Under the pieces are notes generated by a model. It was not told where the DNA came from. It worked only from the letters and a program-made list of their open reading frames with translations, and ran no database searches. Positions 24,667 through 50,695 of a DNA stretch of 64,000 nt are shown one piece after another (the stretch's first letter is position 1; each line of letters starts with the position of its first letter). The stretch is from assembly GCA_977030845.1 (NCBI GenBank), contig OZ365111.1:20646001-20710000 (forward strand), in the 5' to 3' direction. The stretch comes from Fimbriosthenelais zetlandica. Taxonomy: Eukaryota. The translations under genes and the position numbers were made by a program.

Positions 24667-24699
24667 ACTTACCTGAAAGGAGAAAAAAATCAATATTAG
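24667..24699 (-). promoter_or_regulatory. Recursive splice site (ratchet point) RS2, junction 24673/24672
   Basis: Sense strand: ttcCTAATattgatttttttctcctttCAG|GTAAGTcac. It has a CTAAT branch motif (A at 24696), an AG-free pyrimidine tract and a consensus donor. Confidence 0.75.
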
Positions 24700-27600
24700 G
24701 AACAAAATAAAACTGGTGTACTTTCTAGATTGAATTAAAAGACGCATTATCAATGGGAATTATACTTTATTCAGTTCCAACCATTATATTCTGCATATAG
24801 TAGGGAGAAATATAGTAGCAAAGCAACAGTTCTTATCCTGCGAACAAGACCTACTCAGGGAGATTTATTATGTTGCTAGGGGCCTGCACTGAGCCACACT
24901 GCAGGGCCCCTTACAACATCAAGAGCACCCAAACCCCAAAAGGTAGAAAATCACTTAAAAAATAAGGTAGACCTTAGGTATTCTTTTCCAATTGGGGTGA
25001 TTTCTTTTCATAGTTTGAAGCAAACAAAACCCTCATAAATATTATAACTTTAGTAAAGCATAATCTGTAGTGAAAATGAAACGATGAATCTCTCATACTT
25101 GTACCGCATTCTCTTAACTCGATCCACATAACTTTTTATGGGAGCATTATGAAGTCATCGTGTGACACTTCAATGTGAACTAATGGCATCATGTGGAGCG
25201 AGGTGAAGAAGCACTTTCAGTTCCCACATATTATTTAAGACCCTGACTTCTAAGTAAGGCCATAACGTGTCCCATCAGCCTGGTCCATCATTCAATCAAT
25301 AGGGATTTCCAGTACATTTTTAACGTCCATTTTGCAATGCTGGTTGCCTGGCACCAAGTAAGAGACATACAACAATTTCGCTTTCAGTTTTTCTTTTCTC
25401 TCTTTTTTTACTTTTTTCTTTAACATTGAAAGCTACTGCCAGATTGTCTGCATGTCTCAGTTTCATGTAGATTATCTTCTGACATGCACATATGCAGTAA
25501 TAATTCCGGGGACCTCATATGATATGGCAATTTCCAAGGCAATGTAAAACCAGCAATCCAGCATGCTAGCTCAGATGTATAGCAATGCTATTTCATGTCA
25601 CAGTAACTAATATATTATGCACAAAAAACAACTTCGGGAAAATTGAAGGGCATGCCAACACTGTCACTAATAATTGGCATTGCAAGGGTGTCATTCTTTA
25701 TACACTATACTGTGAGAATGGAGCTGAAAACGCGCTTGGGGTCTTTGTCAAAAATCTGTGTCTACACACACCCGACACCCATTGATATGGATAAATGGAA
25801 TATAGACTGTTTATGGGCTACATGGGCGGTGATACCCCATTTGATGTCCTATATTCATGATGTGTATCCAATCCCTTTGATAACTCTTCTCGGTATCAAT
25901 AATGGATGATAACGACACCATTGGCCCGTGTTACCTATGAATCCCCAAGGCTGGATAGGACTTGCATGTGTAATGCATCTATAATTGAATGTTGAGGCTG
26001 CTTATTCACTGAAAAACCTCCTGTTGACTCACATTGAGGTGGGGAGATGGTATGTTTTAAGTGGCCAGACTGTCCAGTAGACTAGCTCTCTTCCCTGCAG
26101 TTGAGCAGCTCAGGTATATCTATATCTTCATATCTAATAATCTATATACCTCCCATTGTTATCTAAAACAGATCGATACTTGTAACTTCAAGAGGTAGAT
26201 AGAGCCCAAGAGGACATATATAACTTTAATAATGGTTTCTTTAGGGGACAAATGAATATAAAAAACCTTGGGCTAGTCTAAAATAGAAGTAGCCGAGTGC
26301 CAAATTGAATGATCCAATGAGGCTGACTGCACCTGAGCCTGGGACCCCTTTAACCCGGGATCATGGCTTTTTGATGAGAGGGCTGGCATGTAAGAGATAA
26401 GCCTATAACTCACTAAAAGCTGGGGGAGTAGAGGGCAGGGGTTCTGACAGGTGTATTGAGAGTCATTCTGAACAAGAAATGACATATCTATATATTAGAC
26501 CGAATCCAATACAAGCATTGAAAGTATCCTAGACATTAATACGCTTTCAGGTCCGGTCATTTGCAGAGGACCTGTGCAAGTGGATGAGTCCGTTTTGAGT
26601 CAACCTGACGAGCAGAAATATCAACGGGTTGTTTATATTTCGGTATGTGAGGTTGGGTTGACGTTGCATCGGGATTTCATAGAATGATGGTTGCTCTGTT
26701 CACACATTGGTTTACACTCAGATGGATTTAGACTGCAGATGCCATTGGAATGGACGAGTCCGATTGCACATTATCTTGTGTAAACGGCCCTTAATGGAAA
26801 GAGGGATTATTTTAAATAGCCATATGGAAGGTATTTGTGATATTCCTTCGCCTTGGTTTCAGTTCAGAAGTGCATGAATCCGCCACATTTTTAAACATGC
26901 AACAGGTATTGTTCAGCATTATAGGCCTGCATGGAATTTGGGATAAAGCAAAGGCCTTCAGCAATTTGTTAATGGCACATTATAGGTGGCTGCCTCTCCC
27001 ACTGGAGCAAGAGGCCCTCTTGCAAACAATACATAGGGACACCAGCATTAAGAGTATCAAAGGGATGTGTAATGGCTATTGCCTCCAGCAGAGCAACAGT
27101 GTTGTTTTACCAGACAAATATGTGCAGTGCTCTCCACCTATATAAAGCGGGTCGATTGGCGTCAAATGCGCTCCGTTCCCTCTCATAATTACAAGGACAC
27201 TTTTTTTTTTAAATTTTAGCAATATAGGTTAACTAACATTTTTAGAACAGCATTCAAATGAATTATGAGTGTACTTAGAAGTACTATCGGATTCAACGAC
27301 GAATTTAATGCTTCAGAAGTGAAAGAAAAATGCTTACATGTGTTTATATAAGCTGGAAAATGATTTAGCAATGTATTAGTAGCTAATTAGTATGATTTAC
27401 CAGAATAGAATTTTCTAAAACAAGTACACCATTCTATAATATCTTAGAAGCTTTGTTTAGCTTTTATACGAACCATAAATGAAATCAAAGATCCCCTTCA
27501 CTGATATAGATAATATATATTTCAGCCCACATAACAAGATAAAAACGTCTAAAAGCTATTGGACACTTGTGCTGTATACAATGACAATATGTCATCACTG

Positions 27601-28842
27601 CTAACACTGTTCTTTCCCGAAGAAAAAACACTATAAAACATAGTGGCATCCCCACACAGTAACAGTTTGTAACATAGGGGAAATCTGAAAGACTATTGGT
27701 ATGGTCGCGTGGCACAGTCAAATAAACTAAACATTTTGTGTCCATGCCATCCATTGTTGCATGCTGATGTTCCCATCGCTATACTACTAAAGTTTACTAG
27801 TTTTAAAAAAACCTGTGATTGCAGGCCTAGTATAAAGGACAGGGAAATGGCCCACAATGAGGTACAGTGGTGAATCCCTGCCTTATCGTTTGGATGAATA
27901 TTTATTTAACGGCTTACGACTGGACACCATAAAAATAGACTTAATTTCCATATGTTGGAGTTCATTATTCAGAGCAGTATTGTGTCCAGACTGGGTAACT
28001 AATTCAAGCTTTACCATTGTTTTCCATGTTTCCATTTTGGTTGAAAGAAAATAAAGGGAAACAGCAAGAGACAATAATTCCATTCAACAAAAAGAATAGA
28101 AAAGCCGCTTTTGTAATGGCAATGAAAAGGGAACGAAAAGCATGGAGTCCAACCCCTATTTGGTAAATTTTAATGAAAAATTGGTTTCGAATTTCTATTT
28201 CTCTTTTATCAATGGGTGTCCAAATAGAATACGGAGCTGTCAAAAAGTGGTACTGTTACAAAGAGCTGCTTGGATGACAAAAGTGAAGCAGTCCCAGAAG
28301 TTCTCCATGCCACTATGGGAGAATGCCGATTGCCTTGTCCCTTGAACTCATGAATACAGGAACACCTTCCTCCCAGATGCTGCAATGCAACTGAAGATCT
28401 TATATGGACTCCTGTGCTTCCGCCGTCAAACTGTAACTCAGATGAGCTCCATATTTTAATGACATGAGCTCAGGGATTCGTGGTTATAATACCAGATTTA
28501 TCCCATTCATTTCTTCAAATGATCAAAACCAGTAATTAAATAGGCCTAATTAAAGCCTGCACTTAGATAATTATTGGCCCTTACACTTGTTGAAAGAGGA
28601 TTAAGACATTCAGGAAGATCGTGTTTATCCAGTGTAAGCATACCTTTGTGTTTTGGCCTGAACATTGACCTTCAAGGAAGGCAATGAAGGAGGAATTCCT
28701 GTCTAGTTCATCCCACGTTACCCTAGCAATATACCGCGTGTAGATGGCCAATCAGTAAAATGCACTAGCAGGCGAGATCATGACATTTAATAGACATTCT
28801 ACCCGTTCAAACTGGGTAGAGGACATTCAGGATAGACTTCCG

Positions 28843-28955
28843 AGTCAGAGACGAGGGAAGTATACTTCCAAGTCACAGTACAGGGAAATAGTCAGAGACG
28901 AGGGAAGTATACTTCCATTATGTTAGTCAGAGGCGACAGCTCAAGTATACTTCCA
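28843..28955. repeat. Short direct-repeat array
   Basis: agtcagagacgagggaagtatacttcca exact at 28843 and 28890, with a degenerate third copy at about 28925. Confidence 0.75.
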
Positions 28956-30149
28956 AATTCAGTCAGAGATGATTTCCAAAGGTCAGAAACGAGAGAAATG
29001 TTTCCAAAAGTCAAGTTAATACATGGATGTATAAAATTAAGCAACTTGTCTGAACCATTATCGAACAAAATTAATCAACAATCAAAACCTACCGTGTGAT
29101 ACGATTCCATACTTGTGTATCACAAATTACTATGCAGGTAAAGGGTATCCGGAAAGGGTATCCATCCAAATAAAGCTCCCATTTATAGGTGGAAAGACTG
29201 CACTAGAAATGCCAACTAACGATAGTACAAAAGTGAGATCCTTTGGGTAATGAAGGTTCCCATAGAGACGAAGCAATGTGAATGGCATGGGGTGGGTTTC
29301 CTATAGCTGCCAAGTAGGCTGACCTGGGAGGTTATAGCCACTGAAGGTAAGTGATCAATGATTTAGTGAACAAGTTGTGATATAGCCATCTTCATCCTAT
29401 ACAGGATAGAGCCTCACCCCAAAACACGGTTCAAAACTAATCAACTGAAGCAGCGTGAAAGCCTTTGAATGCTCAGTCAATGCTTGGAATGTATGAACCA
29501 CCACCATGCCAGAATTTTCCATAGACCTCTTATATATTGAAGGTGGAAGTTTAATGAAAAATTTCAACAAATGTGTGATGATCTTTGCAGCTTGCACTAG
29601 TATATAGCTCAACAAATGTTATCTTGTTGGCTCACTTCCTGCAGAGCAGCCAGAGCACTGTTAATATGGAGGCACACAATACGAGTAATTATCACGTCCA
29701 ATATGAGCCATCCCCCATCATTATATCTAAGTGAGGGAGTCAATGTTATATCCTACTGTCATTTCCACTAGTCCCAATATACACACCATCCCCAGGGAAT
29801 CATTATCTATCTCCCCATTGCAAACAGCAACACTCCAGGGTTTTCACTTATATCTCAGGTATTAGGCCCTGGGATGACATCCCCAATGTGACGATGTTGA
29901 TTGGCTTCGACAAAACCGTTAATTAAAGCCACTAATTAAAACAGATTTTACTCCTCTGTTTATAAGGATGGATAATATCCACGTGAAGTGCATTTAGCAT
30001 TGCCAGTATAGAGAAAGTGGAATAAAGCTTGCTCCTTGGATGCAGAAATGTAAGCCAGTGTGGCTCTGAGGTTAGAACAAGGTATAGTCTGGAGGGAAAA
30101 CCTCCTGCTGAGTCCCAGAGGTATAGACTGTCTTTGTTGTGGACGGAAG

Positions 30150-30450
30150 TAAGGTTTCAGGAGGCTGGAATTCTACGTTAATCCGATATCAGTGTACCAA
30201 CAACACAGGGCGCAATGTTTGCACGGGGAACGACTGTAAACTTGCTAGACACAAAATCCCCTGGTAAAATATTCCCCGTGGACAGCTCACTTCCGGGCTA
30301 ATCACGTCGGGAGTTAACAGGATTTTCGCATTTGGTGTGGACAGAAGAGGGCATAAATAGATCCAATAAGATTCCTTTAGATCTTTGCTAACAACTATAA
30401 ATTGATTGGCAGAGTATAGTGGTGTTATACCCAGATAAGCATCCATGGGG
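30150..30450 (-). mobile_element. Decayed L2/CR1-like LINE fragment
   Basis: AYLGIT...F and RPVLLV resemble the YxYLGI and PILLYG motifs downstream of RT, in the right order. Confidence 0.25.
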
Positions 30451-32228
30451 AAAATGGACCATTTTGATTCATGGTGTTAATATAATGTGCTGAAAATTAG
30501 TGTACTAAGGCATTGCTGCGGCGGCCAGGAATTCGGAGCAATGCAGGTAAGGTGCGACTAACTAAACAGCTGAGAATCTTTTTAACGATTCAGAATAAAC
30601 ATTCTCCTTGTATTGGTTTCAGGGCCGGAACGTGTTTTCAGAACTTTCTGAGAAGCTGGTGCTCTGGAATACGGTTAACAAGGCTATCTGTGTTAGACCT
30701 TGTGCTTCGAAAGAGCACACAAATGTTCAGTTATTTCATGCTTTTAATTTCAAGTCTTTGAGGTCCTGAATCCAATCGCCCAAAGCCATTCATCTTATCG
30801 TGTGTATCTTAATCAAACTGGATGGAAGTAGGTCAACGGACTTCCATCTTTTGAATATCTGGTCCAGCAATGATAATCTGATTACCAGCAGTTAGAATGC
30901 TTTATGCTGATTAAATTCTTCCGTTTTTCAAACATTTTCAGGCTTAGCAGTTATAACTTTGACCACGAGATAGAAGTTTAGCTTTTAAACATATGAAAAC
31001 ACATTTATGTATAGAACAATTATATTGTGACCAAGGCGGCACATATATTGACATCCAGACCTAATATCATCAATCTTTAATTCATACATGCCAGGCCTGG
31101 ATTCGGGATATATTGATTAAGCAATATCCTGTATGTAATATATGAAATACATACTCGCATGGAAACTTTGGAAAGACCTATTGGGCAATATATGGCATGG
31201 GAGGGAGGGAGCCAAAGAATAATTGGTATGCGTTGGGCGTTGGAGTTTGAAACACATCCATTTCCACGGGTGGGGCGAGAGGACGGAGGGTATTCTACAT
31301 GCACCCCAAGCCTGGGCTGAAGGCCAGTGTGCTTATACTACTTGCATATATAGCGAGCCTCGGTCATGTAAAGTGCATTGTGCATGGTGCAAAGACAGAA
31401 AACCCAGTCCCAGAGAGATGTGTATGAGTGCTTAAGGCATTACACTGCTTTGCTCTAGTGGAGGTCAGAATCACTTATTTGAACAAATATGTGCATTTCC
31501 AACAGAATCCGAAATGCTGGATCAAACCAATGGAGTTGTACATTGTGATATTGGGCGGAAGTAGCAGGAGACTATATGGGACATTATTAATATGATTTGG
31601 TTTCCGTTGATTATTGCTTGAAAACGCAGTTGATTATAGATTACCCGGTAGTGATCATGCCGGTATAAAATAATTATAATGCCTCGGCTATCACTTCAAA
31701 TTATTACTGACATATCATTCAAAAGTGGTTTATTCACTCATCAGAATATCACAATAGATAGAGAACAAAGACCGCCACCATACAATCTAGAGTGGGTAGG
31801 GTTAGTTATACTCCAACAAAAATTGATAATATTCAATGAGGTCTGATGTATACAGAGACCTAAAGAGTGGGGATGGTGGTCAATCATACATGTGCATAGA
31901 GATCCCAAAGGGATTTGTATGAGAGCTCTGGGTATCACCGCATATAGATTGAGCAAAAGTATGCAAAGGCATACTTGTATATATCACGATATGTCAGAGC
32001 ACCGAAAGAAGGTGCAATATATCAGACCTCTCTACCCCAATCTTGGACGTTCAGCCTTTCCTTTTCCTTTCACTAATCCTACCTCCTGTGTGCTCCTCAC
32101 ACCAACTCCCACTAACTAAAATCCCCACTTGGCCAGACTGTATAGGCTAGAGGGGCAGTGGCATGTCCTCTTGAGTGAAGACTTGGGTTTTATGTTCGCT
32201 GGTCAAAGGCAATTCATTGAGATTCACT

Positions 32229-32546
32229 CTGGATGGCTGGTCTGAAACAGACTATACTGATAGAAATTACTCTTTCGAGAAATGGTCAGGACGGTGGTTC
32301 AAGTGATCGAGGATAAGGTCAACAGTGCTAGTTGAGCCACGGGACAAGGCTGTAGATTTTAATAATAGTGCAACCAGTGAAATGTTTCTGGATGGCTGGT
32401 CTGAAACAGACTATACTGATAGAAATTACTCTTTCGAGAAATGGTCAGGACGGTGGTTCAAGTGATCGAGGATAAGGTCAACAGTGCTAGTTGAGCCACG
32501 GGACAAGACTGCAGATTTTAATAATAGTGCAAGCAGTGAAATGTTT
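32229..32546. repeat. Tandem duplication, 2 x 159 bp
   Basis: 32229-32387 and 32388-32546 differ at only 3 positions by eye. Confidence 0.9.
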
Positions 32547-32555
32547 AAAATACTC

Positions 32556-32827
32556 TCCCTGAAGCGACCACCTACCTTTAGTCTATAGACCACTTTTGGT
32601 CAGTCCAAAAGGTGGTCACTTTAGGGAAGAATCATGTAGTAAGTGACCATCATCGGTTCTGAGCAAAATCTATCAGACTAATCTGATTATGGATGTGGTC
32701 GCATTAGGGGGTGGGGGTCACACATTACTGTGGGCAGATTGATGTTGGTTATTTCCAATTTGTAATAGGCCTACTATAAAGGAGTGGTCGTTTTGGGGGA
32801 GTGGTCGTTAGTGTAGACTTAACTGTA
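32556..32827. mobile_element. Fragments of a Tc1/pogo-type MITE
   Basis: Repeated gcgaccacc, gaccactttt and ggtggtc motifs. One end reads, on the minus strand, TA-CAGTtaaagtctacactaacgaccac, as expected for a TA target site plus a CAGT terminus. Confidence 0.35.
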
Positions 32828-33489
32828 TAGGAAGACAAAAGGTGATCGAGCAGAGAGTGAAAGACAATGAAGGAAAGATGGATTGAAGCTATGTAAATAT
32901 AGTAGCAATTACACACCAACACGGTGTTGTACAACAATAGGCTAAAGCATTGTTGTACAACACATTGATAGTCCAAGAGATAGGATAAACAAAAAATGTA
33001 GAGAATATCTGTTGGATACAACACCTGAAATGGATAGGAGGAGGAAAGACATCAGCATCAACAAGTCCAAGGGAAATGGCCTTCGATCATGCAGTTTCCC
33101 CCTCATCACACAATAAAGTTAAGCAAGGATTTTCATAAAATCCCACATCATTCAAAATCAAACCACAGATAAAAACATTTACAATCCACAATGTGTTGCC
33201 GACGAATGAGGGGCAGAGATCGATAAGAGTAGATAAATACCAGAGCTCGACCCGAGCCAATGAATACTGACGGCCACGAGCCAGGCGAAGCGATAATCCT
33301 CACGTCAATCCCAACATCTACACTTTATCCTGCTATAAGATCCACACAGTCTCTATAATTAGATCATACTCTACACTATAAACACCAATGTATACCCATT
33401 GTTTGTCCTTATTTCTCACTCTTTATTAATTCTTCCTCTCCCTAATGCTTTCGAGTTCCCTCTCAATTTTCCGTCGGTAATTTTTCATT

Positions 33490-33566
33490 ATCTCTCTCTA
33501 TTCTCCTCCCCAGTCTCTATTTAACCCTCTCTCTCATGCTCCTCTGTCCATCTTACTACATTTCTC

Positions 33567-33597
<31 letters not shown>

Positions 33598-33812
33598 TCC
33601 TTTTCTTTCTTTCTCTCATTCCCCCATGTTCTCTTTATTGTCTCTCCCTCTCTCATCCCGCGCCTCTCTCATTCCCTCTCCCTCTCTATTCCCCTCAGTG
33701 TCTCTCATCACTCTTCCCCTCAGTTTCTCATGTGATCACTCTGTGTATCGCCCACCCCCCTCCCTCCCTCTATTCCCCCCTCTCTCTATCTCTTTCTCTC
33801 TCACCCCTTCCC
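33490..33812. repeat. CT-rich low-complexity tract including (TTTC)n
   Basis: Visible directly; it explains track ORF 33536..33934. Confidence 0.85.
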
Positions 33813-34737
33813 TATCTATAAAGAGAATCTCACAATATATCCCTCACCGCCCTTCATGCTTCGCCTCATTCATTGCTCCAGTCAGCACCTTTGTGCAGCC
33901 AGACAGACCTACAATTACTCACAGCCTTGTATGATTCCATACTCCAAACATCAAACAGCAAAGAGAGAAACGTAGAGCTTTGATTACAGAATGTGATTCA
34001 ATAGTCCAATATATTCACAAGTAGCCCACACACTTATACTGAACTCTTTATATATTGTCTATGTCACTTATTCTAAAATGTAAATTGAGCAGAGCATTCA
34101 CTTGAAATAATGCAGCTTCTCAATATTTTATAAAGATAGAAAATTCACTTTCAGTATCATTTTCTGAAGAGGTGTACCATCAAGTGAATATTATGTGGTT
34201 CAGAATAGACACTAGAATCAGTAGAATGAAATAGTCATTCATAGTTTTTTGTAGTTAATGAATACCATTGTATTCCATATTGTGCTATGCATTATAAGAC
34301 TCCCTGCAACAGAGTATGCTGGATTTAAGATGCCGGATATAAAATGAAATATTCCCGTACAATTTATTCTGCGGCAATAAATATACAATAAAACGTTATC
34401 CTAGCCAGGACAGAAGAGTTGAAGGAATAATCTCAGATGATCACACAGTGGGAGATAGGGGATGTGTAGGACCGTGCCATAGGGACTGCTCAAAAACAAG
34501 AAATAGTCTTGATTGGGATTAAGATCGAGGCCATTAGCTAATTGGTCGTACAACTCGATGGTGGGTAGAAGGAGCCACATGGGAGTGGGTAGTTGCTAAT
34601 CTAAAATACCCTACAACATGGGACCTGGGATTTTAGAGAAACGAGCCATATATTGTCTAGCTGTCTTAGAACTACCCTGTATTTATATGTATGCACTGTA
34701 AAAGTAAATTTGGTATATAACACTAAGAGTCCCATAT

Positions 34738-34814
34738 ACACTCATTGAGTCACTCACTCATTCATTCACTAATTGAGTCACTCACTCACTCATCGAGTCA
34801 CTCATTCAGTCATT
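34738..34814. repeat. Degenerate (CACT/CATT)n microsatellite
   Basis: Visible directly; contains TGAGTCA twice. Confidence 0.8.
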
Positions 34815-36690: not shown

Positions 36691-39446
36691 CTAAAGGTAT
36701 ATAGAATCCCCGAGATGGATATAGAAGAGGGAGGCGGAAGAAGCCTATAGTATATAGTGCCTATATAGAAATCCAACTGTTGCTTTTTGTGGATAGAGAT
36801 AGATAGAAAGCGATCATGTAGAATACCAATGCCTGCTACATGTTGCCTCTGATGCATTTAGATCCCTGCTTCACTGCGCTAGATCACACACTCTCTACCT
36901 CCTGCATGGCCCCCTCCTCTGTTGCATTCATGCAGATGGCGTTGGCTCCGCTCTGGTAGCTTTCCCACTGTCCTCTATGGTAAACAAATCACCCATCGTT
37001 TGCCTCGGGATAAAAAGACCACAACATTGCTGCAGGTAATCCAGAATTGCTGCATGGAGGCCCAGCTGCCTATACTATAGCCCAGCGGCACTGCTTGTTT
37101 GGGATGGGTGAAAAAACGTATGACAATTGAAAATGGTGAAAGGTAGGAAGGCAATGGTTGCCATGGCATACAAAGAGGATGGGTGGGGAGGTAGGGAGGC
37201 TGATGAAACCTGCTGAGCTGTCGATGGAGATGACCACATGGAGAAAACCGAGAAGGTAGGTCGAGAGAGAGAGGGAGGGAGGGAGAGTGTGGGAGGATGC
37301 ATCAAGATCTGGCAAATGGAAGGCGAGGCACGGAGGAAGGAGCTAGACTTAGTTCATTACCATTAGTCCCAATTTGAAGCTCACGATGTTGGTGCATGCA
37401 ATATGGTGGTGTCAGTGACCACCACTTTCAGCTACCATTTCCTTGCATCTTTCTAGCACCAACACTTCCCCCCTGAGACCCATGCTTGGGTTCCCTTAGC
37501 ATCTCCCCCCAAGGATGCTGATGCTGATGAATGGAAGGGATGAGGGAGCTTTTCCCCTTCCCTTCACTTGATGTAGTGGGCAGTGGGCAGGGGGAGAGGG
37601 ATCCGGGCCAAGAGGTCAAACATCAACAGCTGTTTGTACAGCAAATTCCTAATGGCATTTACAGATCATGATCGGGGTGAGAAGGAAAAGGTCCCTTCCC
37701 TATAGGATCAAGATCAATGACCATTTGACATGATCCAGAATAGCTATTCGCCATAATCAGGAATTGGCCAAAGCAGGCGATTAAGGGTGACAGAATGACA
37801 CTAAATGGTAGGTAGTATATAGCAAGAAGCGCCATCTACAAAGGGCTATACTGCCAGACGCACATGCTCTTGGGAAAAAAGCCAAGGCATTTCAAATAGT
37901 TGTTTAATGTCCAACTATTTCAGGTATTGCAGGAAAAGTATAGGAAACACAATGTTGGTACTGCCTGCACTTCTCGGGTGGCAGGAATAGTTATCACATT
38001 GCAAATACAAATTACATGATGGTCCTGTAAAATTCAAAGGACCGTATAGTTTAAAATATTCAGTTCTGAAATACCGGATTCGGATTCAATAGCTCACTAG
38101 CACAAGCTGACCAGAAACTTCATAACTGCACCCAAGCTTTGCATTCCGTAACTGCACCCATAGTTCAATCCAAATTATAAGATGCATAGACAATGTTATA
38201 GCCATTGGTATTCCATTTATAGCAGCATCAAATATAGAAGTTGGAGGCAATATGTGAGTAAAATCTACACAGAAGTCTCAAATTTCTATTCATATAGCCT
38301 AAGTTAATTGGACTATATGGTCCAATACCATACATTTTAAGAGATCTGACATATTGATAAAATCAGCAATGTCACATAAAATGCTATTATGTCAAAGTTG
38401 TAAAGGTAATTACTTGTTTGCCTTGTATTAGGCTAAGAGGCCTCTCTTCAATCTTCAGTCACAGATCAATTCACACAAGGCCAATACCTGCTCTGTACGA
38501 TCCAGCACAGGCTGGATCAATCTGACACTGTGTATAGAATTATTACCGGTGCCATAATCTATACTGCTTTTACAATAAACAACCCATGGCAATGCCTTAC
38601 CTCAAGCAAATGATGTTCGCTATCATAGAGATAGAGGAAATCTGCATCATAATCCATTTTTCGCTTGTAATTTTGTCATGTATTAAATCAATGGAACACT
38701 GCAGGGAGGCAGAATGGCCGGGGTAATTCACAATATGCACGATCTGATACCGAATCAAAGGTCGAGGGACAGGCACTATGGCACAACAATCAACCGATCA
38801 GTAAATTTTGACAAGGCTGTCTTAAATCCTGCCCAAAATGTGTATCTAAAAGACCCATTTTCTTTTTATAAATTAATTTTTCCAGCTGTACAAAATATTC
38901 ATATTTAATTGAGAACATGTTGTGCACTGTACTTAAATTTATTATTTATATATCTACAGCTGGGTTCATAGAAATGTCTACCACTGTATTTAATAGTTTT
39001 GTGGTAAATATATATACAGAAGCCCACACCGGGGTCATTACAAGTAGGCCTATGTAAAGCTGCACAGTAGCCAACATATAGCGGCTCAAATGATTCTAAT
39101 TGTCAGGGCTATTGAAAGGTGTGGGTGCAGGCTTGCATTTCAAGATAAGATTTATTAGCGTCATTTTCCATTTAATGAAGTGTATAGACTGCACCTCCCC
39201 ACTCAATGCTACGATTCACGGACCGTATAAGCCGATGCATTTCATAAAAACAGGTGGAGTTTATGCTGTGGCATACAAATATCCAATTTGGCAGCAACTG
39301 CATGTTCGGAAAATTCCTGTATACAAATGATTTAATACGAGTATTATTGCATATTCAAAGGTACATGTATATCATACGATATTTACAGGCTCAACTGTGG
39401 TTGCAATTGTTGGGTTACGAGTGAAAGTATCTGGGGTCGATATAAT

Positions 39447-39580
39447 ATAGAGAGGGAGAGCGAGGGAAAAACTTAGGGAAAGAGAGATATAAAGAGATAG
39501 AGGGAAAGAGAGAGAGAGAAAGAGCGAGTGAGTGATGCTGGTAGGGAAGGGGAAAGATGGAGAGAGAGAGGTAGAGGGAC
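39447..39580. repeat. GA-rich low-complexity tract
   Basis: Visible directly in the sequence. Confidence 0.8.
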
Positions 39581-40869
39581 AATAGATTGTATCCAATAAG
39601 TGTATAAAAAATGATCATTTCAGCTTTCCCTGCCGACTATAACCATGCTTCCATTCCATACCACTATCCACAGCGTATCTATACAAACGGCTATTTTAGG
39701 CCCACATGACCGGATAATCCAGCAATTACGAGTCCAATCATGTCAGCTAATCCACGGTTTGCCACCGTGAAATTATTTATTACATTATCTCCATTGATGC
39801 AGACTGCATTATTTGCATGCCAACAATGCAGACCTGTGGAAGGTCGAAGATTTATACATTATAGTGAAAATGGTATCCCGACTACTACTGATAAAACATA
39901 ATGCATACTTCAGAGGTGAAAATTTAGACCACCTATACAATTGAATTGCGTTCAGCAGTACACATAGTGATGGAATTCCCTCATGTTATTGTTCAATCTA
40001 ATATATATTTGCTTTCATTCCATAATTATAAAGGAATGGAGATTTTATGATTGAAATTCTGTCTTCAACCATGCGCATAGGCACATGGCCGACACAGCAT
40101 TAATAAAACCTGTAAAAGGAAGAAAGAAAGGGGAAAAAATCATGAAATGACAACGAAAGGCTTTCTCTTTCTATGATTATGAATTAATTCAATTCTGGAC
40201 GCCTGGGAACTATTCCTGTTGAAGTGCGAAACCAGAAATTGATCATGTCTCGAAGGGTTCTTAACAGATGAAAAACACTTCAAGCTAGGTGGAAACGAGT
40301 CTTCTGCAAGAGGGAAAATGGATGGCTTCATATAGAATTTGACTATAGAGAAGACCTATATAACGGCGAAATAACTGCGATGCATACTGAAATGATTTCT
40401 AGATGGCTTACTTACAATTTTACTTACAATTTGCCAACCGAGATACAATATGATTCATACCAACTGGCTGTGGATGTACCAAGATATTAATTTTGTGGAC
40501 AGGTGTGAGAAAGCACCATTATAAATAGGTCCCTGGAAACACTATAGATGTATTTTCTCAGAACATATATCCCTTTCTGCGGGCTAGAGAAACACATTTA
40601 CCTGAATCACCTATACACCAAATGAGCAATCCCAGGTGTAACCATGTTTCAGCCAGCGAGAAAATATATGAAGGAAAAATGCTTTACTTCTATTAAAGGT
40701 CTTTCAAATTCTCGATAATACAAGAACCATATGTATCTCCCGAAGGGCTTGCATGGAGGCAGCCCTGGAAATATTATGTATTGCGAAAATGCCACTAACA
40801 ATGAAGTAGTGAATATAAATTTATTTAACGTGCAGACAGCAAATATTCAGTTATATCCGAGGAAATGCG

Positions 40870-41700
40870 CTGTTGGTACACGATGGTCTGCTATTCTCAA
40901 ACAGCAGCAATGGTTCTTTTACATGCCTCTCATCACACCACCAACATCAATTAAAAAAAGGGGTGGTGAGAACTAATTTATAAGACCTCCAATGACAACA
41001 CTGTTTGCTACTGTCTTCTGGTACAGTTCTACCAGTGTCATCCTTGCCATCCATCTGTAGGCGGGGCAGGAACAGGGCCTTTGATTCCTACCTTTTTGCT
41101 TCGAGTATTAAAGCCAAGCAAATGGGAACACGTTTGTGGATGGAAGGGAAGGTCATGAATACATTCATTCTACGCTCCATGCTTTTGTCCTCAAAGGCCA
41201 GGGGTCTGGGTTCCATCAGGAAGTCCATCTGCTCAATAGAGCCAGGAGCCCGGGGTCTGGATTTCCCCTCTAAGATAACCTTCAGTGGTGTGTGCATGTG
41301 GAGATAATACCTTAAGTGAGGGAGGAAAGGCAGAGCATAGTGTAGAAAACAATAAAAAGGCATTGCTGGCAACAATATTCAATGCCAATGGCTTGCTGCT
41401 CCGCCGTCATTGGCCGAGTGATTGGCAACTGGAGGTTGTAATTGAAGACACTGTGAAAGATGAGGCATTGAGTCAATGTATAATTTGGCACTTAACATTT
41501 TCTCCTCGGGGATTAACAGTGGAAGGGAGAGAGAATAGTTTCTGAATTTGCCTCTTTGCCAGATTAGCTTTTCCAAGTGTATGGTACAACTGCTGAGGGA
41601 GTACATGGCAATCGATTGGTGCACACAAGGAAATGACGAGGTGAAATGAAGCATTGTGAAGGAATTATTCAAATCCTGCCCACCACATGGCATCCCATGT
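40870..41700 (-). mobile_element. Decayed repeat, possibly Ngaro-type ORF1, with a paralogous fragment near 45160
   Basis: LEKLIWQRGKFRNYSLSLP resembles KEKIWxGEFxxFSxLLP. The segment ttctc(a/g)aacagcagcaatggttcttt(t/c)acatgc occurs at about 40873-40905 and again at about 45159-45190. Confidence 0.3.
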
Positions 41701-42410
41701 GGCTCCACAGACGGCTGTATGGAACAATATAGGTCTCAGGTTAATTATCAATGCTACCTATAATAGGCAACCATCAAAAGTATGATAATCAATGCTACAT
41801 TATATTCATCATCTAATCCATGGGTCCATTAGATTCAGCATTTTAACATTGCTTTCTTGAATTCAATCAATTTTGAGGAATGCTAAGAACCTGAGAGGGA
41901 ACATCATTTTCCTATACTACTGATTTGTATGTACAGTATAATATAGGCGTTCCGGAATACATTGCAACGCAAGATCAGATCCGGTTGGGGGTTGGGTGGG
42001 CGAGGGGCGCGTTAGGGATTCAGGCCCCCCATACCCCCTTTCAGACATGAAATTTGCGTCGCTCAAAAATGTTTTTGAACGAATGCCCTTTTACAAAATC
42101 CTCGGTTTGCAACTGTACAAAGATAGTGATCAGACTCCTTTATAACAACCAAGGTCCTCGTCTGCTGTTTGTCACTTTGTCCTGGTGGCCCTTAAATAAA
42201 GGGAATTTGATTTTTATAGACTAGCAGCAGTATCCCATACCCAGAGGGTAATTGTGTTGGACCTTATAATAGGGCAGTAAAAGACTGCTCCTGTCAAAGC
42301 CCTCGTCGCTATATAGGGGCGCACATGAACTTTTACGATCTCACCGACCAGTGGATGAGAGTTTTGGACTGAGAGGTGGTTGTTTTCTCCTATAGATACA
42401 CACAACTTAC

Positions 42411-42511
42411 CGGATGCAGGTCCTTTTTGTTGGTCATCTTGCCGTTAGTATGCCCAGCGTAAATCCCTCCTCGGCATTGCTTCCACCGCGCCCCGAACGG
42501 ACCGTACAATC
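42411..42511 (-). other. Candidate alternative RyR exon; ATG at 42437 encodes MTNKKDLHP in phase with exon 2
   Basis: Acceptor cttcattcag| and donor CCG|GTAAGT, in a locally CpG-rich patch. The start context caagATG is identical to that of exon 1. Confidence 0.35.
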
Positions 42512-44091
42512 CTGAATGAAGCGGTAAGACTAAAGCACTCCGAGCGTAGCGGAGGAAAGTGAAGATGTATCCATTCCCAATGGCTACAGTCCAATACCTT
42601 CAGCTGGCACTGCAGACTGAGTCATGCTTTTATCACCTATGTATCCTCTCACTAGTGGTAGCCTATAGGAGGGTGAAATCAATCGGCAATGCTGGTCAAT
42701 ATATAAAAGAATCACAATGACTAGGCTGGGGGAGTTGTAGTACTAGTAGTTGGAGTGTCAGATGTAGTGCTAGTTGTAGAAGGACAGGGAAGAGAGGAAT
42801 TGAGGGTAGAAGGGTGGCTGAACCAAGCAGCACACCTTGAATTGCCGCCCTTGGCACCAGGCACTGCATGGGCCCTTTCTGCTGTCGCATCTGGAGCAGC
42901 AATAGAACTACTAGAGGGAGTGGAAGCGATGGAAGTGGGGTGGTGGTTGGCACCAAAGCAAGCCAACAAGAGAGAGGGAGAGAGCTCTCGTTCACAAAGT
43001 CCCCCATCCAGTCAGTGTGGCAGTGCATCCTCGCAGCACTGCCAGAATCCAGCAACAACCCCCTGGTGCCAATGGCCTTCTTCTAATTTACCTGCAATGT
43101 GTGTCGATAGTTGTACACTTTATAATACAAGATACCATACATCCATCTCAAAGGTGCGACTCGCTGAACTTCATGGGAGGGTGTACGTTTTAATCAAGTT
43201 CAGATTATTGTTGGTAGGGTCAAATGAATTCGATAATATCTAAGTGTTGCATCTAGCATCAATGAACCTCCATCAACACACGTACCTGGATGATATACCT
43301 GCTGCATATCAATATTATATACTGGGAGGTTGGTGGTGGCGGTGGTGGTGGTGGGTGCTTGGGTACTATAGGGTATACGTTCAGAAGGACAAGGGCATTG
43401 TTCCAATTACACTGATATCTCTCCTGATTATAGGTAAGTGAAGCCGTAATGGAAAACCTCCCAGCTACAGAGAAAGCTGTCTCAAGTCAGTAACCCTTTG
43501 GGAGATAATCGTTCACGACAGGCTAAGGGATAATAGGAGAGGCTTACACTGTATGGTTATTCCCAAAGGAAGGCCATCTTTTTGTATGTCACCTCAATGA
43601 GGCTCAAGGGTAAAACTAGAAGTCCCCTGGAATGCTGAAGCCTATACATGCTTTTGCCCAAGCCATTAAAGTGTATTTAACTGCTTACAAAACACAAAGA
43701 ATCCGTTTGATGGTGAAGTGGGTAAGGTAATGGGAACCGGCGGTTCGGCAAACATAGAAGTTTCTCGAAGTCTTAATATATCTAGACCCACTATGTTAAA
43801 TGTAATTCCTTTGACCAAAGAGAAGTTGGTAGAAACCTGTAGCCTACGGGTTCTCTTCATGGTCGGAATAATGACCTTCTCGAAGCCTTCCTCTTCATAC
43901 AAATATGTAATTGAATTTTCATGATGCAAGATCATTAAATACAATCCCGAAGGTGCAAAGGATTGCGGATGCCCACCTGATCATTCTCAGGAGAGAAACA
44001 CAAGGGTAAATGATTATCACATATCAATGAAAGACGATTGATTGAAGGTCAAGCAGGGACTGCATGGTCTCGAAACAAAATGGAGTGCCAG

Positions 44092-44099
44092 CGAGAGAT

Positions 44100-44152
<53 letters not shown>
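44092..44152. repeat. (GA)n microsatellite
   Basis: Uninterrupted run of more than 20 GA units. Confidence 0.95.
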
Positions 44153-44155
<3 letters not shown>

Positions 44156-46754
44156 GGGCAGCGAGAGTGAGAGAACATAATAGATCGAGGAGAGGGAAAG
44201 ATGAGGAGCAAGCAAGAAAGCAGCAGAAATATGAGGGAATGAAATGCAAAGAATGGCCACGACATGTGGTCCAGGTGAACATTCAAACATTGAATAGAAA
44301 AAATATTTTCAGATAATCAAATTGTTTTCAGTCTTCTAGACTGCCGTCCATCAATTAGTCCAGCACATTTTACCATCAGCCATCACATCGAGCAACGAGG
44401 GGAACTTAAGTCCCCGGGCGGGGAAGGCTTCCTCCACTGCTCCAGTGGGATAATACATTCTTATTAACCAGTCTTAAACGAATTCAGTTGATGGATCGTG
44501 AGCAGAGTTTGTGGTCAACAGACAGAGATGAGAATAAAAACATAAGTCTGAGAAAACTAGGCTCACTGCTCGCGGCAACATAATATTGTCATAATCTGTT
44601 AGCTCATTGATAGGTCTTTGGAGAATGTTCTTTTAATTTGCACTTGAAACTGTGCTCTGCCTGTGCAGCAACAGCAGCTCCCCTTTAAAATTGCAATACG
44701 GATCCGTTTTTTATGTTGAAGAAAACTCATTAGAAAGTGATGCAGAGAAAAGAAAAGGAGAAGTATTTCTCCGAAGTGCCCGCTGCTTCAGTGGGGCCCT
44801 GCCCACAATCAAGAACACAGGAAAAACCTATTCCTGTCAGTAACAGAATTGCACAGAGGCAATAGTATGCCCCGTCATAAACACAATCTAGAGTTAGAGA
44901 GGAGTCGGTCTAGAGCAATGGAATGGGTAGAGCAGCCAGGGGCCAGCCTCCTGCTATACACTGTGAGAAACCTCCAATGTCAATGTACTATGAAAAGCAG
45001 CAATCTTGACATCCAATCCTATTGTTCACTACGCTTGTTCTGCTGCTGTGATGATTATTTGCGTTTATATATTTTTTAGAGTGAATGAGTGAACATTTTG
45101 TTCAGCAGATTTTCAGCTATCAGAAGGAAACACGCTGTGTGTGACAATGGCCTGTTCTTCTCGAACAGCAGCAATGGTTCTTTCACATGCATGCCTCACC
45201 CTATAAAGACAGTGGGAGACATGGCTGGCATTTGATAGTTCACTTGGCAGCTCTATGTGGAGAAGGACAATGGCAAACTGGGAGAACTGATAGGTAGATA
45301 CAACCATTTTTAACAGTGGATTACAGCATATTGTCAGCCCACTGTGAGGTGATAGGACATGCCAGCAGCCCACCCAATCAGCTCACCAATAGTGTCACAT
45401 GGAAACAGCAGGTGGCGATGGATTGGTTTGGCTTTGGGCAAGGATGGAAGAGGCAAAGGAGTTGAACATTGTACGGCATACATTTGTTGACCCAAGATCG
45501 AAATAGTTCATATGGGTAAAAGCTTTCATATGCTCTCTGAGGTTATATATACTGGGATATCAAGATGGACTTGGGACAAAGTGTGGGAAATCAAAAGGGG
45601 ACTTGTGACAGAAAGTGCAAAATCAAAAGGAGACAGATAAAAATCACACCCAGGTTTATGTATATAACTACATTATTGTACATAACATTGAGCTGCTGCA
45701 CCTAAGTGCACCAAATCACTGTTAATAGACCAAACTGATAGGTTAACTGCAGTCATTCGTCATATTCTGCTGACGTCAAATCAATACATTACAATACTCT
45801 CAGGGCGGCCTCACATTGGAGCCAGGAGATGAGATCTTTGTCTGTCGAGACTAACAGCTGTATCCTATTGTAAAGATGGCGTGTAAAACGATATAATATA
45901 AGTCCCATCCCAGAGGATGAGCAATGCCTTGTACCGCATACCAGCAGAGAGGGACTAAAGATAACAAGTCTAGATTATACTTGTCTTGAATAAATCATTT
46001 CATCGCAGGCGCTGAGCATATCCTTCCTTTAAAAGCCGTAAAAAGAATGGCTTTATGAAAGCACCCCTGACAACAATATCAGCCAGACCTAACGGCATCC
46101 CATTTCAGTGAGATAGAGCCCTTGTTCCCCACTTGCGAGGCGAGCGAATCAAGCTATGAATAATTCACATTGCACATTATACTAATAGGCATATGTTTTT
46201 TGAAAAGAGTGGGGATGAGAATTCGGGGGATCAAATAAGAAACATGGAGAACAAAGGGAATAGAGGTGTGTGGGGGAGAAGACAACAATAATAGGTTGTG
46301 TTTTTCAGACGAATGCTGTCCAGAATGAAATTTGCATACAAAGCTGCTTGGAGAATTCACCATCATTGATTGAAATGCAGGCTGCAGTGATGATAAGGCA
46401 ATTCAGACGAGGGTCAGCGGGGAAGGAGGCGCGAGCCGGGACTGTCACCCTCAAGCAAGCTCCAATTGCTCACGTGATGAGATAAAGAGCATCTAATCCA
46501 ATCAGAATCGACCTTTTTTCTGTTTCCGGTAAATATCTGTAAGTGTGGAAGACATGTCGGCAATAAGCTAAATCCTATCTTAGGGGATAATCCATGTAGA
46601 AGGAGAAACAAGATTACCATCAATTACATGAAGAGATTCACCACCCATATACATGCATGTATGTAGGCCTATGTCCTATGTTTCGGACATCTGCAGTTGG
46701 CACTAAACGCATTGCACTTCAGCGATTGTTTGCTAACTCGAAAAGAAACATCCA

Positions 46755-47250
46755 TTGGACACAGTTTGCTGGCGGTTCAACAGGGGAGAAGTCTTTGCCC
46801 TTTGTGGACGGGTTTTAAAAACCAATAGCCTTTTTTCTTCATTCAATTTAAGAAATTCAGGAAAACTGGATCCCACAAGGGACACACGTTTTACAGCTGC
46901 AGAAGCCTTTGTGATTGAGTTTCAAGAAGCAAAAGCCATTTTGATTCTCCACATGGATTTCTTTCTAAAAAAAACTCTGGAATATTCCGGTAAAAGACAT
47001 CCTAATGGGAACATATCAATCCCCAATGACCTGTATAATATTATATATTATCATGACCTCATCTCAAACCTATAGCTCAGCCCTGGAACTATAATGCTGG
47101 AGTAATTGATGCCCAAGGTATCGACTCGGTTGCAGAAACAAAAGAATTTGAAAGAGGCACAGACAGGCAGGGTTGACCGTGTGTCCATTCATCTCCCATC
47201 CATTGACAATCTGGACGGGCTCAGAGATGGAAATAGAGTAGAGAGAGATG
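46755..47250 (+). mobile_element. Decayed DIRS/Ngaro-like (tyrosine-recombinase) retrotransposon fragment, end of ORF1 and start of RT
   Basis: Motifs in the expected order: VCWRFNRG (ORF1 CxxFNxG-type), LEYSGKR (cf. GFxLxYxGPR) and, after stops, KEAQTGRV (cf. KEVxxGRxAGPF). Recognised by eye only. Confidence 0.45.
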
Positions 47251-47446
47251 AAGAATGCTAATTGAGAACTTGACACCCTATTATTGACAAGATATTCTAT
47301 CAAAATGATGGACTGATGGTATAGATCCATGGTAGAATATAATACGGTATAATATACCATTTACATAAACCTACAGCAAGTAGGTCTTTGAATAATACCC
47401 ATTAGGCAATATAAGTGAGATTATTAATTATTGTATACCTGCATGC

Positions 47447-47577
47447 GGCCCTTTTTCAACGTAAAAAATTCCCATAGTCATTCCTAAACCCTGTATTGAA
47501 ACGGGCTCCCTGGGCCTGTTTTCAAAGGGAATTTTAATTAGCAATGCTATGGCTAATATTCGTTTTGAAACGGGCCC
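47447..47577. mobile_element. Two adjacent ~60-66-bp inverted-repeat mini-elements
   Basis: ggccctttttcaa...ttgaaacgggct (47447-47507) and gggcctgttttcaaa...ttttgaaacgggccc (47512-47577). Confidence 0.55.
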
Positions 47578-48526
47578 ACAGAAGCCTATTCATATTACAT
47601 AATGTTATGATGATAATCATAATACTCATGCTGATTGATTGACTGTTAATGATGGATTGATTATGATCGATCTATTCATTAATGTGTTATGCAACGACAC
47701 GTTGTCGAAGGATGAAATGCAGTGAGAAATCCAATATATTACATGAATAACTATGTAGGTTCATATAATAGATTCATTCAAGCATGTAGATAATAATACC
47801 CAAAATCTGAAAATTCCACAAAATCGTATCTTTTGATGTCTGAATACTTATAAAAATCGTCAGAAACAATCTGGGGAGAGAGAGAGAGAGAGGGTGAGTG
47901 AGAGAGAGACGTAAAACTATTTTCCTCCCAAAATACCAATGAATGCCAGTAAAGTGGGGATCGAAATACTACATAGCAAATCGATATAAGACTTTGATGA
48001 TATGGCCTTCCACAAGCGACACGCAAGCTGGGGTTACTGCCAGTCTTTCATCAAAGTGAACAGCCACAAATCTCCAATCTTCCGAGAGTTATATCACGCA
48101 CCATTTTACTACATATTTTCTATGCCATAAAAATGATTTTTTTAATAGAATGCTTGTATAATCATGATGTAGACTGAGGTGGATGTTATCCAAAATTCAG
48201 AGTGATTTTGCAACAGTGTTACATTCCAAAAATTATTTTAAACAGAGCTGTTGAAAGCTGTAAGAAACCGAGATAAATGTATGGTGGAAATGTGAAACAG
48301 CACAAGCGCGACGTCTAGAGTCACGGCCTGAAATTAGGCTGGTATTTCATGAATTGCAGCTGTCTGCAAAAGTCACAGAAACATTCAGTCTGGATCCCAA
48401 AATATTAGCCCTCACTAATTAGGCCTTATAAGAAGTATGTATATATGCAGAAATTAACAATGTTTTATGAAATTTGTACCATGCTATAAGACTCACCTTC
48501 GAATAAGTAGATCACTGACAAAAGAG

Positions 48527-48562
48527 ACTTACCTGTAAAAATAAAATAAAAGAACATATTAG
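48527..48562 (-). promoter_or_regulatory. Recursive splice site (ratchet point) RS1: full 3' splice site directly abutting a 5' splice site, junction 48533/48532
   Basis: Sense strand: tttCTAATatgttcttttattttatttttaCAG|GTAAGTctc. It has a CTAAT branch motif (A at 48559), an AG-free U-rich tract and a consensus donor. Confidence 0.75.
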
Positions 48563-50629: not shown

Positions 50630-50640
50630 GAGCGACAGCG

Positions 50641-50695
<55 letters not shown>

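What the first reader, a model, noticed from the sequence alone, without database searches (positions are those of the whole stretch)
24667..48562. Apparent recursive-splicing system subdividing the 52-kb first coding intron of an invertebrate ryanodine receptor gene
Seen: on the RyR sense strand, two sites each join a complete 3' splice site (the same CTAATAT branch motif, an AG-free pyrimidine tract, CAG) directly to a perfect GTAAGT donor. They sit at 48533/48532 and 24673/24672 and would cut the intron into 9,477, 23,860 and 18,811 nt. I found no comparably strong site on the antisense strand. Known: this AG|GT ratchet-point design drives stepwise intron removal in Drosophila (e.g. Ubx, kuz, osp) and in some long vertebrate neuronal introns. 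Inference: this RyR intron is removed in three steps. I am not aware of recursive splicing reported for RyR genes or for this kind of invertebrate, but I cannot check the literature here.
Basis: partly seen in the sequence, partly recalled or inferred. Interest (0 to 1): 0.85.

Follow-up and report, generated by a model that had tools for sequence, protein, structure and literature searches.

The report
Two predicted recursive splice sites, RyR intron
The 52-kb intron after the first coding exon of an invertebrate ryanodine-receptor gene holds two sites built exactly like the "ratchet points" that fruit flies use to remove very long introns in steps; this is a strong new example of a known mechanism, but no RNA data could be obtained to prove it.

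Summary
On the minus (RyR sense) strand, ttttacag|GTAAGT (48533/48532) and cctttcag|GTAAGT (24673/24672) lie in a 52,148-nt intron between RyR coding exon 1 (ends 58010) and exon 2 (starts 5861). They would cut it into 9,477, 23,860 and 18,811 nt.

They are the only YAG|GTAAGT sites on the sense strand. Both have 83-89% pyrimidine tracts, AG-free zones of 57 and 38 nt, a CTAAT(AT) branch motif at -26/-23, and TT at -5/-6, a hallmark of fly ratchet points. About 0.01 such sites are expected by chance (P of two or more about 5e-5, before counting the branch motif).

The sites are not repeats and are not homologous to each other. RS1 is followed at +36 by AAG|GTGAGT, giving a cryptic exon with an in-frame stop.

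Function is unproven. No sequencing run was listed, so no reads could be laid. No close relative's intron could be fetched, so conservation is untested.

The design is long known in Drosophila. It was predicted computationally in sea urchin, bee, beetle and mosquito in 2009. This scan has already noted many similar sites elsewhere in this genome.

Verdict: new member of a known kind, moderate interest.

The parts
58010..58066 (-). RyR coding exon 1 (CDS part): ATG..ACG, 19 codons MAEGDGNTKAQDDISFLRT, phase 0
   Evidence: Joined to exon 2 it aligns without a gap across the junction to the insect RyR N-terminal domain 5y9v, E 3.9e-19.
58004..58009 (-). Exon 1 donor GTGAGT (ACG|GTGAGT), start of the 52,148-nt intron
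48556..48562 (-). RS1 branch-point motif CTAATAT (branch A 48559, 26 nt from the junction)
48533..48555 (-). RS1 pyrimidine tract and acceptor (gttcttttattttatttttacag). AG-free for 57 nt, TT at -5/-6.
48527..48532 (-). RS1 recursive donor GTAAGT (CAG|GTAAGT, 9/9 match to the U1 consensus; ACG|GTAAGT, 7/9, after ligation to exon 1)
48497..48532 (-). RS1 candidate cryptic RS-exon, 36 nt, in-frame TGA (VSLFCQ*)
   Evidence: also noted in scan note s1-188444
48491..48496 (-). Downstream donor GTGAGT (AAG|GTGAGT) that would define the RS1 cryptic exon
24693..24699 (-). RS2 branch-point motif CTAATAT (branch A 24696, 23 nt from the junction)
24673..24692 (-). RS2 pyrimidine tract and acceptor (tgatttttttctcctttcag). 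AG-free for 38 nt, TT at -5/-6.
24667..24672 (-). RS2 recursive donor GTAAGT
24481..24672 (-). RS2 candidate cryptic RS-exon(s). Strong donors CAG|GTAAGC at +150 (GT at 24522) and AAG|GTAAGC at +192 (GT at 24480); weak TAG|GTAAAG at +61. All versions carry in-frame stops.
5862..5890 (-). Final acceptor of the intron (ttcatttctgtattatttccaatttgcag)
5742..5861 (-). RyR coding exon 2, 120 nt, [40 protein letters not shown], followed by GTAAGT
   Evidence: ORFs on contigs of other species keep the same exon boundaries.

Best explanation
RS1 and RS2 are intronic ratchet points (zero-nucleotide recursive splice sites) of the Drosophila type, serving the RyR pre-mRNA.

Proposed course (inferred, not shown):
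1. As the 52-kb intron is transcribed, U2AF and U2 recognise the CTAAT branch point, the long U-rich tract and the CAG of RS1. This is probably helped by exon definition through the AAG|GTGAGT donor 36 nt downstream.
2. Exon 1 (ending ACG) is ligated to RS1 and a 9.5-kb lariat is released.
3. The junction recreates a donor, ACG|GTAAGT. That donor is used next, which skips the 36-nt stop-containing cryptic exon.
4. Exon 1 is ligated to RS2 (23.9-kb lariat), a donor is recreated again, and the last 18.8 kb is removed to join exon 1 to exon 2.

The mRNA is the same as after one-step splicing. The presumed benefit is accuracy and speed of removing a very long intron.
For: Shown by sequence:
- Both sites are exact (Y)nNCAG|GTAAGT on the sense strand.
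- They are the only two such cores in the sense strand of the intron, against about 0.01 full sites expected (P about 5e-5).
- At loose thresholds sense and antisense counts are alike (8 vs 6), so these two are outliers and not part of a general bias.
- CTAAT lies at -26 and -23, although only 3.2% of sense-strand AGs have it in that range.
- The AG-free zones are 57 and 38 nt.
- TT at -5/-6 is present at both. This holds for 196 of 197 fly ratchet points (10.1101/006163).
- The segments of 9.5, 23.9 and 18.8 kb fall in the fly range of 2.6-63.6 kb, mean about 18 kb.
- The intron is over 40 kb, the class in which 63% of fly introns have a high-confidence recursive site (PMC6110457).
- RS1 has a short cryptic exon with an in-frame stop and its own donor, as in the RS-exon model (PMC8605326).
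- The RyR alignment runs unbroken across the exon 1/exon 2 junction, so no coding exon is missing between them.
- The sites are unique in the window and not homologous to each other. The four ORFs of 130 aa or more in the window have no Pfam match, and there is no Rfam family or tRNA in the window.

Published background: RP sites are enriched 4-22 fold on the sense strand of long introns in sea urchin, bee, beetle, mosquito and fly (PMC2773006).

Lead only: this scan's notes list more than 50 ratchet-type sites in other giant introns of the same genome.
Against: There is no RNA evidence of any kind. No sequencing run was listed for this DNA, so there are no junction, saw-tooth or lariat data.

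There is no conservation evidence. The only related loci found share exon 2 alone, and exact 24-mers of both sites are absent from the metagenome collection.

The regenerated donor ACG|GTAAGT (7/9 to consensus) is not clearly stronger than the RS1 cryptic-exon donor AAG|GTGAGT (7/9; my rough PWM gives 10.3 vs 12.0). The competition that should enforce skipping is therefore not evident from sequence.

RS2 lacks a nearby strong downstream donor. The candidates are weak at +61 and strong only at +150 and +192.

The organism is unidentified, so its splicing preferences are assumed and not measured. The P value comes from one intron chosen by a reader who was looking for unusual features.
Confidence: 0.68

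Rival explanations
1. Regulated poison or cryptic cassette exons. The sites are acceptors of short exons (36 nt at RS1; 150 or 192 nt at RS2). Their inclusion puts a stop codon after codon 19 and sends the RyR mRNA to nonsense-mediated decay, as a means of dosage control. The GTAAGT at the exon start would be incidental or only occasionally used.
For: Each site has downstream donors as good as the regenerated one (AAG|GTGAGT at +36; CAG|GTAAGC at +150). All candidate exons carry in-frame stops. Some fly RS-exons are in fact expressed (PMC8605326).
Against: A perfect 6/6 GTAAGT placed exactly at the acceptor junction at both sites is not expected for ordinary poison exons, and it accounts for most of the statistical excess. 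In flies, such cryptic exons are constitutively skipped through the ratchet donor. This reading overlaps with the RS-exon model rather than excluding it.
Confidence: 0.14
2. The sites have another sense-strand function that needs only part of the motif. Examples are intronic U1-binding sites that suppress premature cleavage and polyadenylation in a long intron, or decoy splice sites, with the upstream acceptor-like tracts being fortuitous.
For: CAG|GTAAGT is a 9/9 U1 target. Long introns are known (general knowledge) to depend on U1 binding for full-length transcription.
Against: This does not explain why both sites also carry a CTAAT branch motif at the right distance, an AG-free zone, an 83-89% pyrimidine tract and TT at -5/-6. 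The other two AG|GTRAGT sites on the sense strand lack such tracts. One of them (48497) is the RS1 cryptic-exon donor.
Confidence: 0.1
3. Chance or non-functional sequence: two fortuitous matches, or relics of a mobile element that happen to resemble ratchet points.
For: The finding was picked post hoc from a very large scan. One perfect-donor site also occurs on the antisense strand (43433/43434). Conservation and RNA use are untested.
Against: About 0.01 full sites are expected per intron strand, or about 3e-4 when the branch motif is included, and two were seen, both on the sense strand. Neither site lies in an intra-window repeat, and the two share only the splice signals.
Confidence: 0.05

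Closest known systems
Drosophila intronic ratchet points / zero-nucleotide recursive splice sites (Ubx, kuz, osp, fz, luna; Burnette 2005, Duff 2015, Pai 2018, Joseph 2018/2021)
   Same: Identical consensus (Y)nNCAG|GTAAGT, TT at -5/-6 and an unusually strong pyrimidine tract. Sense strand of a constitutive intron over 40 kb, with segments of about 10-24 kb. A short, stop-containing cryptic RS-exon with its own donor follows RS1.
   Different: The host is a ryanodine-receptor gene in an unidentified invertebrate, not a fly; its exon-2 look-alike ORFs come from unnamed draft and metagenome contigs. There is no RNA or conservation support here. The ratchet donor is not clearly stronger than the RS1 cryptic-exon donor, and the RS2 cryptic exon would be long (150-192 nt) or weakly defined.
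Computationally predicted RP-site enrichment in long introns of sea urchin, honey bee, flour beetle and mosquito (Shepard, McCreary & Fedorov 2009, PMC2773006)
   Same: The same kind of evidence (motif plus sense/antisense contrast in introns over 50 kb) and the same conclusion, that invertebrates outside Drosophila carry ratchet-type sites.
   Different: That work gives genome-wide densities (0.5-2.2 per 100 kb) without naming RyR. Here a single intron carries 2 sites in 52 kb (3.8 per 100 kb), described site by site.
Vertebrate recursive splicing through RS-exons (Sibley 2015; reviewed in PMC5126111, discussed in PMC8605326)
   Same: An acceptor followed by a regenerated donor, and definition by a downstream donor. 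Inclusion of the RS-exon would introduce a premature stop. Occurs in long genes of excitable tissues.
   Different: Vertebrate long introns show little sense-strand enrichment of perfect RP motifs (ratio 1.5 or less), and few fully suppressed sites are known. The motif here is of the fly type.

Membership tests
Fly-type intronic ratchet point (zero-nt recursive splice site) | Juxtaposed strong 3' and 5' splice sites around AG|GT, consensus (Y)nNCAG|GTAAGT | tested here: met
   ttttacag|GTAAGT at 48533/48532 and cctttcag|GTAAGT at 24673/24672; tracts 83% and 89% pyrimidine
Fly-type intronic ratchet point (zero-nt recursive splice site) | Lies on the sense strand of a very long (over 10 kb, typically over 40 kb) intron, with no coding exon at the site | tested here: met
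   52,148-nt intron between RyR exons 1 and 2. The RyR alignment is continuous across the junction.
Fly-type intronic ratchet point (zero-nt recursive splice site) | Excess over chance and over the antisense strand | tested here: met
   Two full sites against about 0.01 expected, and none of equal quality on the antisense strand. Loose-threshold counts are 8 vs 6. One intron only, so the sample is small.
Fly-type intronic ratchet point (zero-nt recursive splice site) | TT at -5/-6 and a usable branch point in an AG-free zone | tested here: met
   TT at both sites, CTAAT at -26 and -23, AG-free zones of 57 and 38 nt. Fly figure of 196/197 from 10.1101/006163.
Fly-type intronic ratchet point (zero-nt recursive splice site) | Short cryptic RS-exon with a downstream donor, non-coding or frame-breaking | tested here: met
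   Met at RS1: 36 nt, AAG|GTGAGT, in-frame TGA. RS2 is only inconclusive: strong donors at +150 and +192, a weak one at +61, all with stops.
Fly-type intronic ratchet point (zero-nt recursive splice site) | Ratchet donor stronger than the cryptic-exon donor (ensures skipping) | tested here: inconclusive
   Regenerated ACG|GTAAGT is 7/9 and AAG|GTGAGT is 7/9 to the U1 consensus. A rough PWM from remembered frequencies gives 10.3 vs 12.0. No species-specific splice model is available.
Fly-type intronic ratchet point (zero-nt recursive splice site) | Core motif conserved in related species against diverged intron flanks | not testable with these tools
   The ORF across RS2 has no homologue in the protein collection. 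The contigs of other species that were fetched share only exon 2 with the window. One 3.1-Mb contig has no DNA served. RP 24-mers are absent from metagenome contigs.
Fly-type intronic ratchet point (zero-nt recursive splice site) | RNA intermediates: exon|GTAAGT junction reads, saw-tooth coverage, segment lariats | not testable with these tools
   The look-up of sequencing runs listed no run for the RS1 region or for exon 1, so read laying could not be used.
Poison (NMD-coupled) cassette exon | Exon with a premature stop, flanked by a functional acceptor and donor | tested here: met
   36-nt (RS1) and 150/192-nt (RS2) candidates all contain in-frame stops.
Poison (NMD-coupled) cassette exon | Detectable, regulated inclusion in mRNA | not testable with these tools
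   No RNA data.

The most novel reading that the evidence does not exclude
This genome belongs to an invertebrate outside the insects, and its exon-2 peptide ends FLQSMANK, unlike the insect form. It uses fly-type zero-nucleotide ratchet points genome-wide, with cryptic exons of a nearly fixed length of about 36 nt. If so, ratchet-point splicing would be an ancient, general solution for giant introns in protostomes or bilaterians, not a dipteran speciality. RyR would be one of many excitable-tissue genes that depend on it.
Probability: 0.3. Interest if true: 0.6.

Novelty: new member of a known kind. Interest (0 to 1): 0.36.

Why it matters
If the sites are used, RyR, the main calcium-release channel of muscle and neurons, joins the set of long genes whose expression depends on recursive splicing. 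A single base change at either GTAAGT would then be expected to force a stop-containing cryptic exon into the mRNA just after codon 19, as happens for kuz and Ubx in flies.

The other predicted sites that this scan has noted in the same genome point the same way. Together they suggest that the fly-type mechanism is widespread in a non-model invertebrate. So far only motif statistics from 2009 have supported that for non-fly invertebrates. On its own, this locus adds an example and not a new principle.

Tried and rejected
RNA evidence: two run searches (RS1 region as RNA; exon 1 with any library type) listed nothing, so read laying was never usable.

Conservation, none of which reached an orthologous intron:
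- The 120-aa plus-strand ORF that crosses RS2 was searched against 5.8 billion proteins in the hope of finding ORF calls from relatives. There were no hits.
- The exon-2 peptide was searched against 1.84 billion representatives. This found 136 hits, mostly short read-through ORFs of other species at 87% identity or less.
- Their contigs were fetched (L001-L008). They align to the window only over exon 2 at 73-80% and hold no ratchet motif in up to 10 kb upstream of exon 2. That is uninformative, because RS2 lies 18.8 kb upstream here.
- The one 3.1-Mb contig had no DNA served. A full-length RyR was over the size limit. A 623-aa N-terminal model was not on record.
- Exact 24-mers of both sites were absent from metagenome contigs.

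Repeat origin: rejected, because the sites are unique in the window and the two are not homologous to each other.

Nested gene or RNA: rejected. The four ORFs of 130 aa or more have no Pfam match, and there is no Rfam family or tRNA.

Coding cassette exon: rejected, because of in-frame stops and the unbroken RyR alignment.

Other: the Atlas look-up of exon 2 was uninformative. One literature search was badly framed and gave nothing useful.
Full report
**The locus**

The minus strand carries the start of a ryanodine-receptor gene. An ATG at 58066 opens 19 codons (MAEGDGNTKAQDDISFLRT). They end at 58010 and are followed by GTGAGT. After ttgcag at 5862, a 120-nt exon (5861-5742) encodes [40 protein letters not shown] and is followed by GTAAGT.

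The joined 59 residues match RyR N-terminal domains, with insect RyR first (5y9v, E 3.9e-19). The alignment runs straight across the exon junction...DDISFLRT|EDMICLSC against ...DDVSFLRT|EDMVCLSC. The intron is therefore 58009-5862, 52,148 nt, in phase 0, and no coding exon is missing inside it. No further RyR exon was evident in the six-frame reading of 1-5741.

**Checking the observation**

Both sites read exactly as reported.
- RS1: ttctaatatgttcttttattttatttttacag|GTAAGTCTCT, junction 48533/48532.
- RS2: cctaatattgatttttttctcctttcag|GTAAGTCACG, junction 24673/24672.
- Segments: 9,477, 23,860 and 18,811 nt.

A scan of the whole window for AG|GTRAGT finds four sites on the minus strand and five on the plus strand. 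Only RS1 and RS2 combine a perfect GTAAGT with a pyrimidine-rich, AG-free upstream tract. The tracts are 83% and 89% pyrimidine over 18 nt, and the AG-free zones are 57 and 38 nt.

Within the intron, an order-1 Markov estimate gives 0.34 YAG|GTAAGT cores per strand. Of all 18-nt windows, 2.9% reach 15 or more pyrimidines. About 0.01 full sites are therefore expected, two are seen, and the Poisson P is about 5e-5.

At loose thresholds the two strands look alike, with 8 sense and 6 antisense sites. The two sites are thus outliers and not part of a compositional bias.

Both sites carry CTAAT(AT), with the branch A at 26 and 23 nt from the junction. Only 3.2% of sense-strand AGs have CTAAT at -15..-40.

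There is one tatag|GTAAGT at 43433/43434 with a 67% pyrimidine tract, and one such core per strand is within chance.

**What it is not**

- It is not repeat-derived. A kilobase around each site has no other match in the window beyond 14-21-nt words. The two sites share only the splice signals, and only 1% of the window is intra-window repeat.
- No nested gene or RNA was found. The four ORFs of 130 aa or more have no Pfam match, and there is no Rfam family or tRNA.
- The sequences after the sites cannot be coding cassette exons, because each candidate has an in-frame stop. These are the 36 nt after RS1 up to AAG|GTGAGT, and the 150 or 192 nt after RS2 up to CAG|GTAAGC or AAG|GTAAGC.

**Comparison with what defines fly ratchet points**

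The literature gives the following features.
- A more prominent pyrimidine tract than ordinary acceptors, and TT at -5/-6 in 196 of 197 sites.
- Segment sizes of 2.6-63.6 kb, mean about 18 kb.
- High conservation of the core.
- RNA signatures: junction reads, saw-tooth coverage and lariats (10.1101/006163).
- Prevalence in introns over 40 kb, where 63% have a high-confidence site.
- A short cryptic RS-exon of about 50 nt with its own donor. It is usually out of frame or carries a stop, and is skipped because the ratchet donor wins (PMC8605326).

The sequence here meets the motif, strand, intron length, TT at -5/-6 and segment size. For RS1 it also meets the cryptic-exon feature (36 nt, TGA in frame).

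Two points are weaker.
- After ligation to exon 1, the regenerated donor is ACG|GTAAGT. It matches the U1 consensus at 7 of 9 positions, no better than the cryptic-exon donor AAG|GTGAGT.
- RS2 has no strong donor nearer than +150.

**What could not be tested**

RNA: the look-up of sequencing runs listed no run either for the RS1 region (RNA libraries) or for exon 1 (any library type). No reads could therefore be laid. None was listed, which does not mean that none exists.

Conservation: several routes were tried.
- An ORF crossing RS2 has no homologue in the protein collection.
- The exon-2 peptide finds many read-through ORFs from other species that keep the exon boundaries.
- Their contigs share only exon 2 with this window, at 73-80% identity.
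- Exact 24-mers of both sites are absent from the metagenome contigs.

Because no representative exceeded 87% identity over this very conserved exon, a close relative is probably not in these collections.

**Mechanism proposed (inferred)**

1. RS1 is recognised co-transcriptionally as an acceptor through CTAAT, the U-tract and CAG. The donor at +36 probably helps by exon definition.
2. Exon 1 is ligated to RS1, releasing a 9.5-kb lariat.
3. The recreated GTAAGT donor is then used to reach RS2, releasing a 23.9-kb lariat.
4. The recreated donor is used again to reach exon 2, releasing an 18.8-kb lariat.

The mRNA is unchanged. If either ratchet donor failed, a stop-containing exon would be inserted after codon 19.

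I put this reading at about 0.68. The rivals are regulated poison exons (0.14), which overlap with the RS-exon model; U1-only or decoy functions (0.10); and chance (0.05).

**Novelty**

Recursive splicing at such sites has been established in Drosophila since 1998-2005 and genome-wide since 2015-2018. A 4-22-fold sense-strand enrichment of RP sites in introns over 50 kb was reported for sea urchin, honey bee, flour beetle, mosquito and fly in 2009. A predicted site in a 230-kb locust intron has been studied (PMC8892266).

A full-text search for recursive splicing together with ryanodine receptor returned five papers, four of them listed, each mentioning recursive splicing only once. None of them appears, from its title and abstract, to describe recursive splicing of a RyR gene. 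The host gene therefore appears to be new in this respect.

This scan's own notes (unchecked leads) list more than 50 ratchet-type findings in other giant introns of the same genome, including cadherin, EXT1, KIF13, prickle and TPST. Four follow-ups reached the same verdict of well supported but RNA-unverified. One note reports a second U1-type element 35-39 nt downstream of ratchet points elsewhere. RS1 (+36) fits that pattern and RS2 does not.

**Verdict**

It is a new member of a known kind, of moderate interest.

Noticed in passing
window 43420-43442 (+ strand): An antisense ratchet-like site, ctcctgattatag|GTAAGTGAAG, at 43433/43434. It has a perfect donor, a 67% pyrimidine tract and a 38-nt AG-free zone. 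One core per strand is within chance expectation (0.34), and no plus-strand gene was seen.
   Followed up: partly
window 32228-32546: A tandem duplication of a 159-nt unit (2 copies, 98% identical) inside the RyR intron. Its origin is unknown.
   Followed up: no
window 14624-14719, 39432-39532, 44065-44169, 50592-50698: Long (GA)n/(TC)n microsatellites scattered through the intron, in both orientations. They account for all the 'inverted repeats' reported.
   Followed up: no
window 5355-5413: A (TGAA)n-type microsatellite in the intron after exon 2.
   Followed up: no
P0080; P0004-P0015; loci L001-L008: The position of the intron between RyR codons ..FLRT and (E/D)D.. is shared by ORF fragments from other species. 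In one of them (P0080) an ORF reads through an intron of only about 72 nt at this position, against 52 kb here. Two different RyR exon-2 versions (P0006, P0010) come from one draft assembly, GCA_013332715.1.
   Followed up: partly
window 1-64000: Very low repeat content for a giant intron. Only about 1% of the window matches another part of it, and none of the four ORFs of 130 aa or more has a Pfam match, so no transposon protein was evident.
   Followed up: partly
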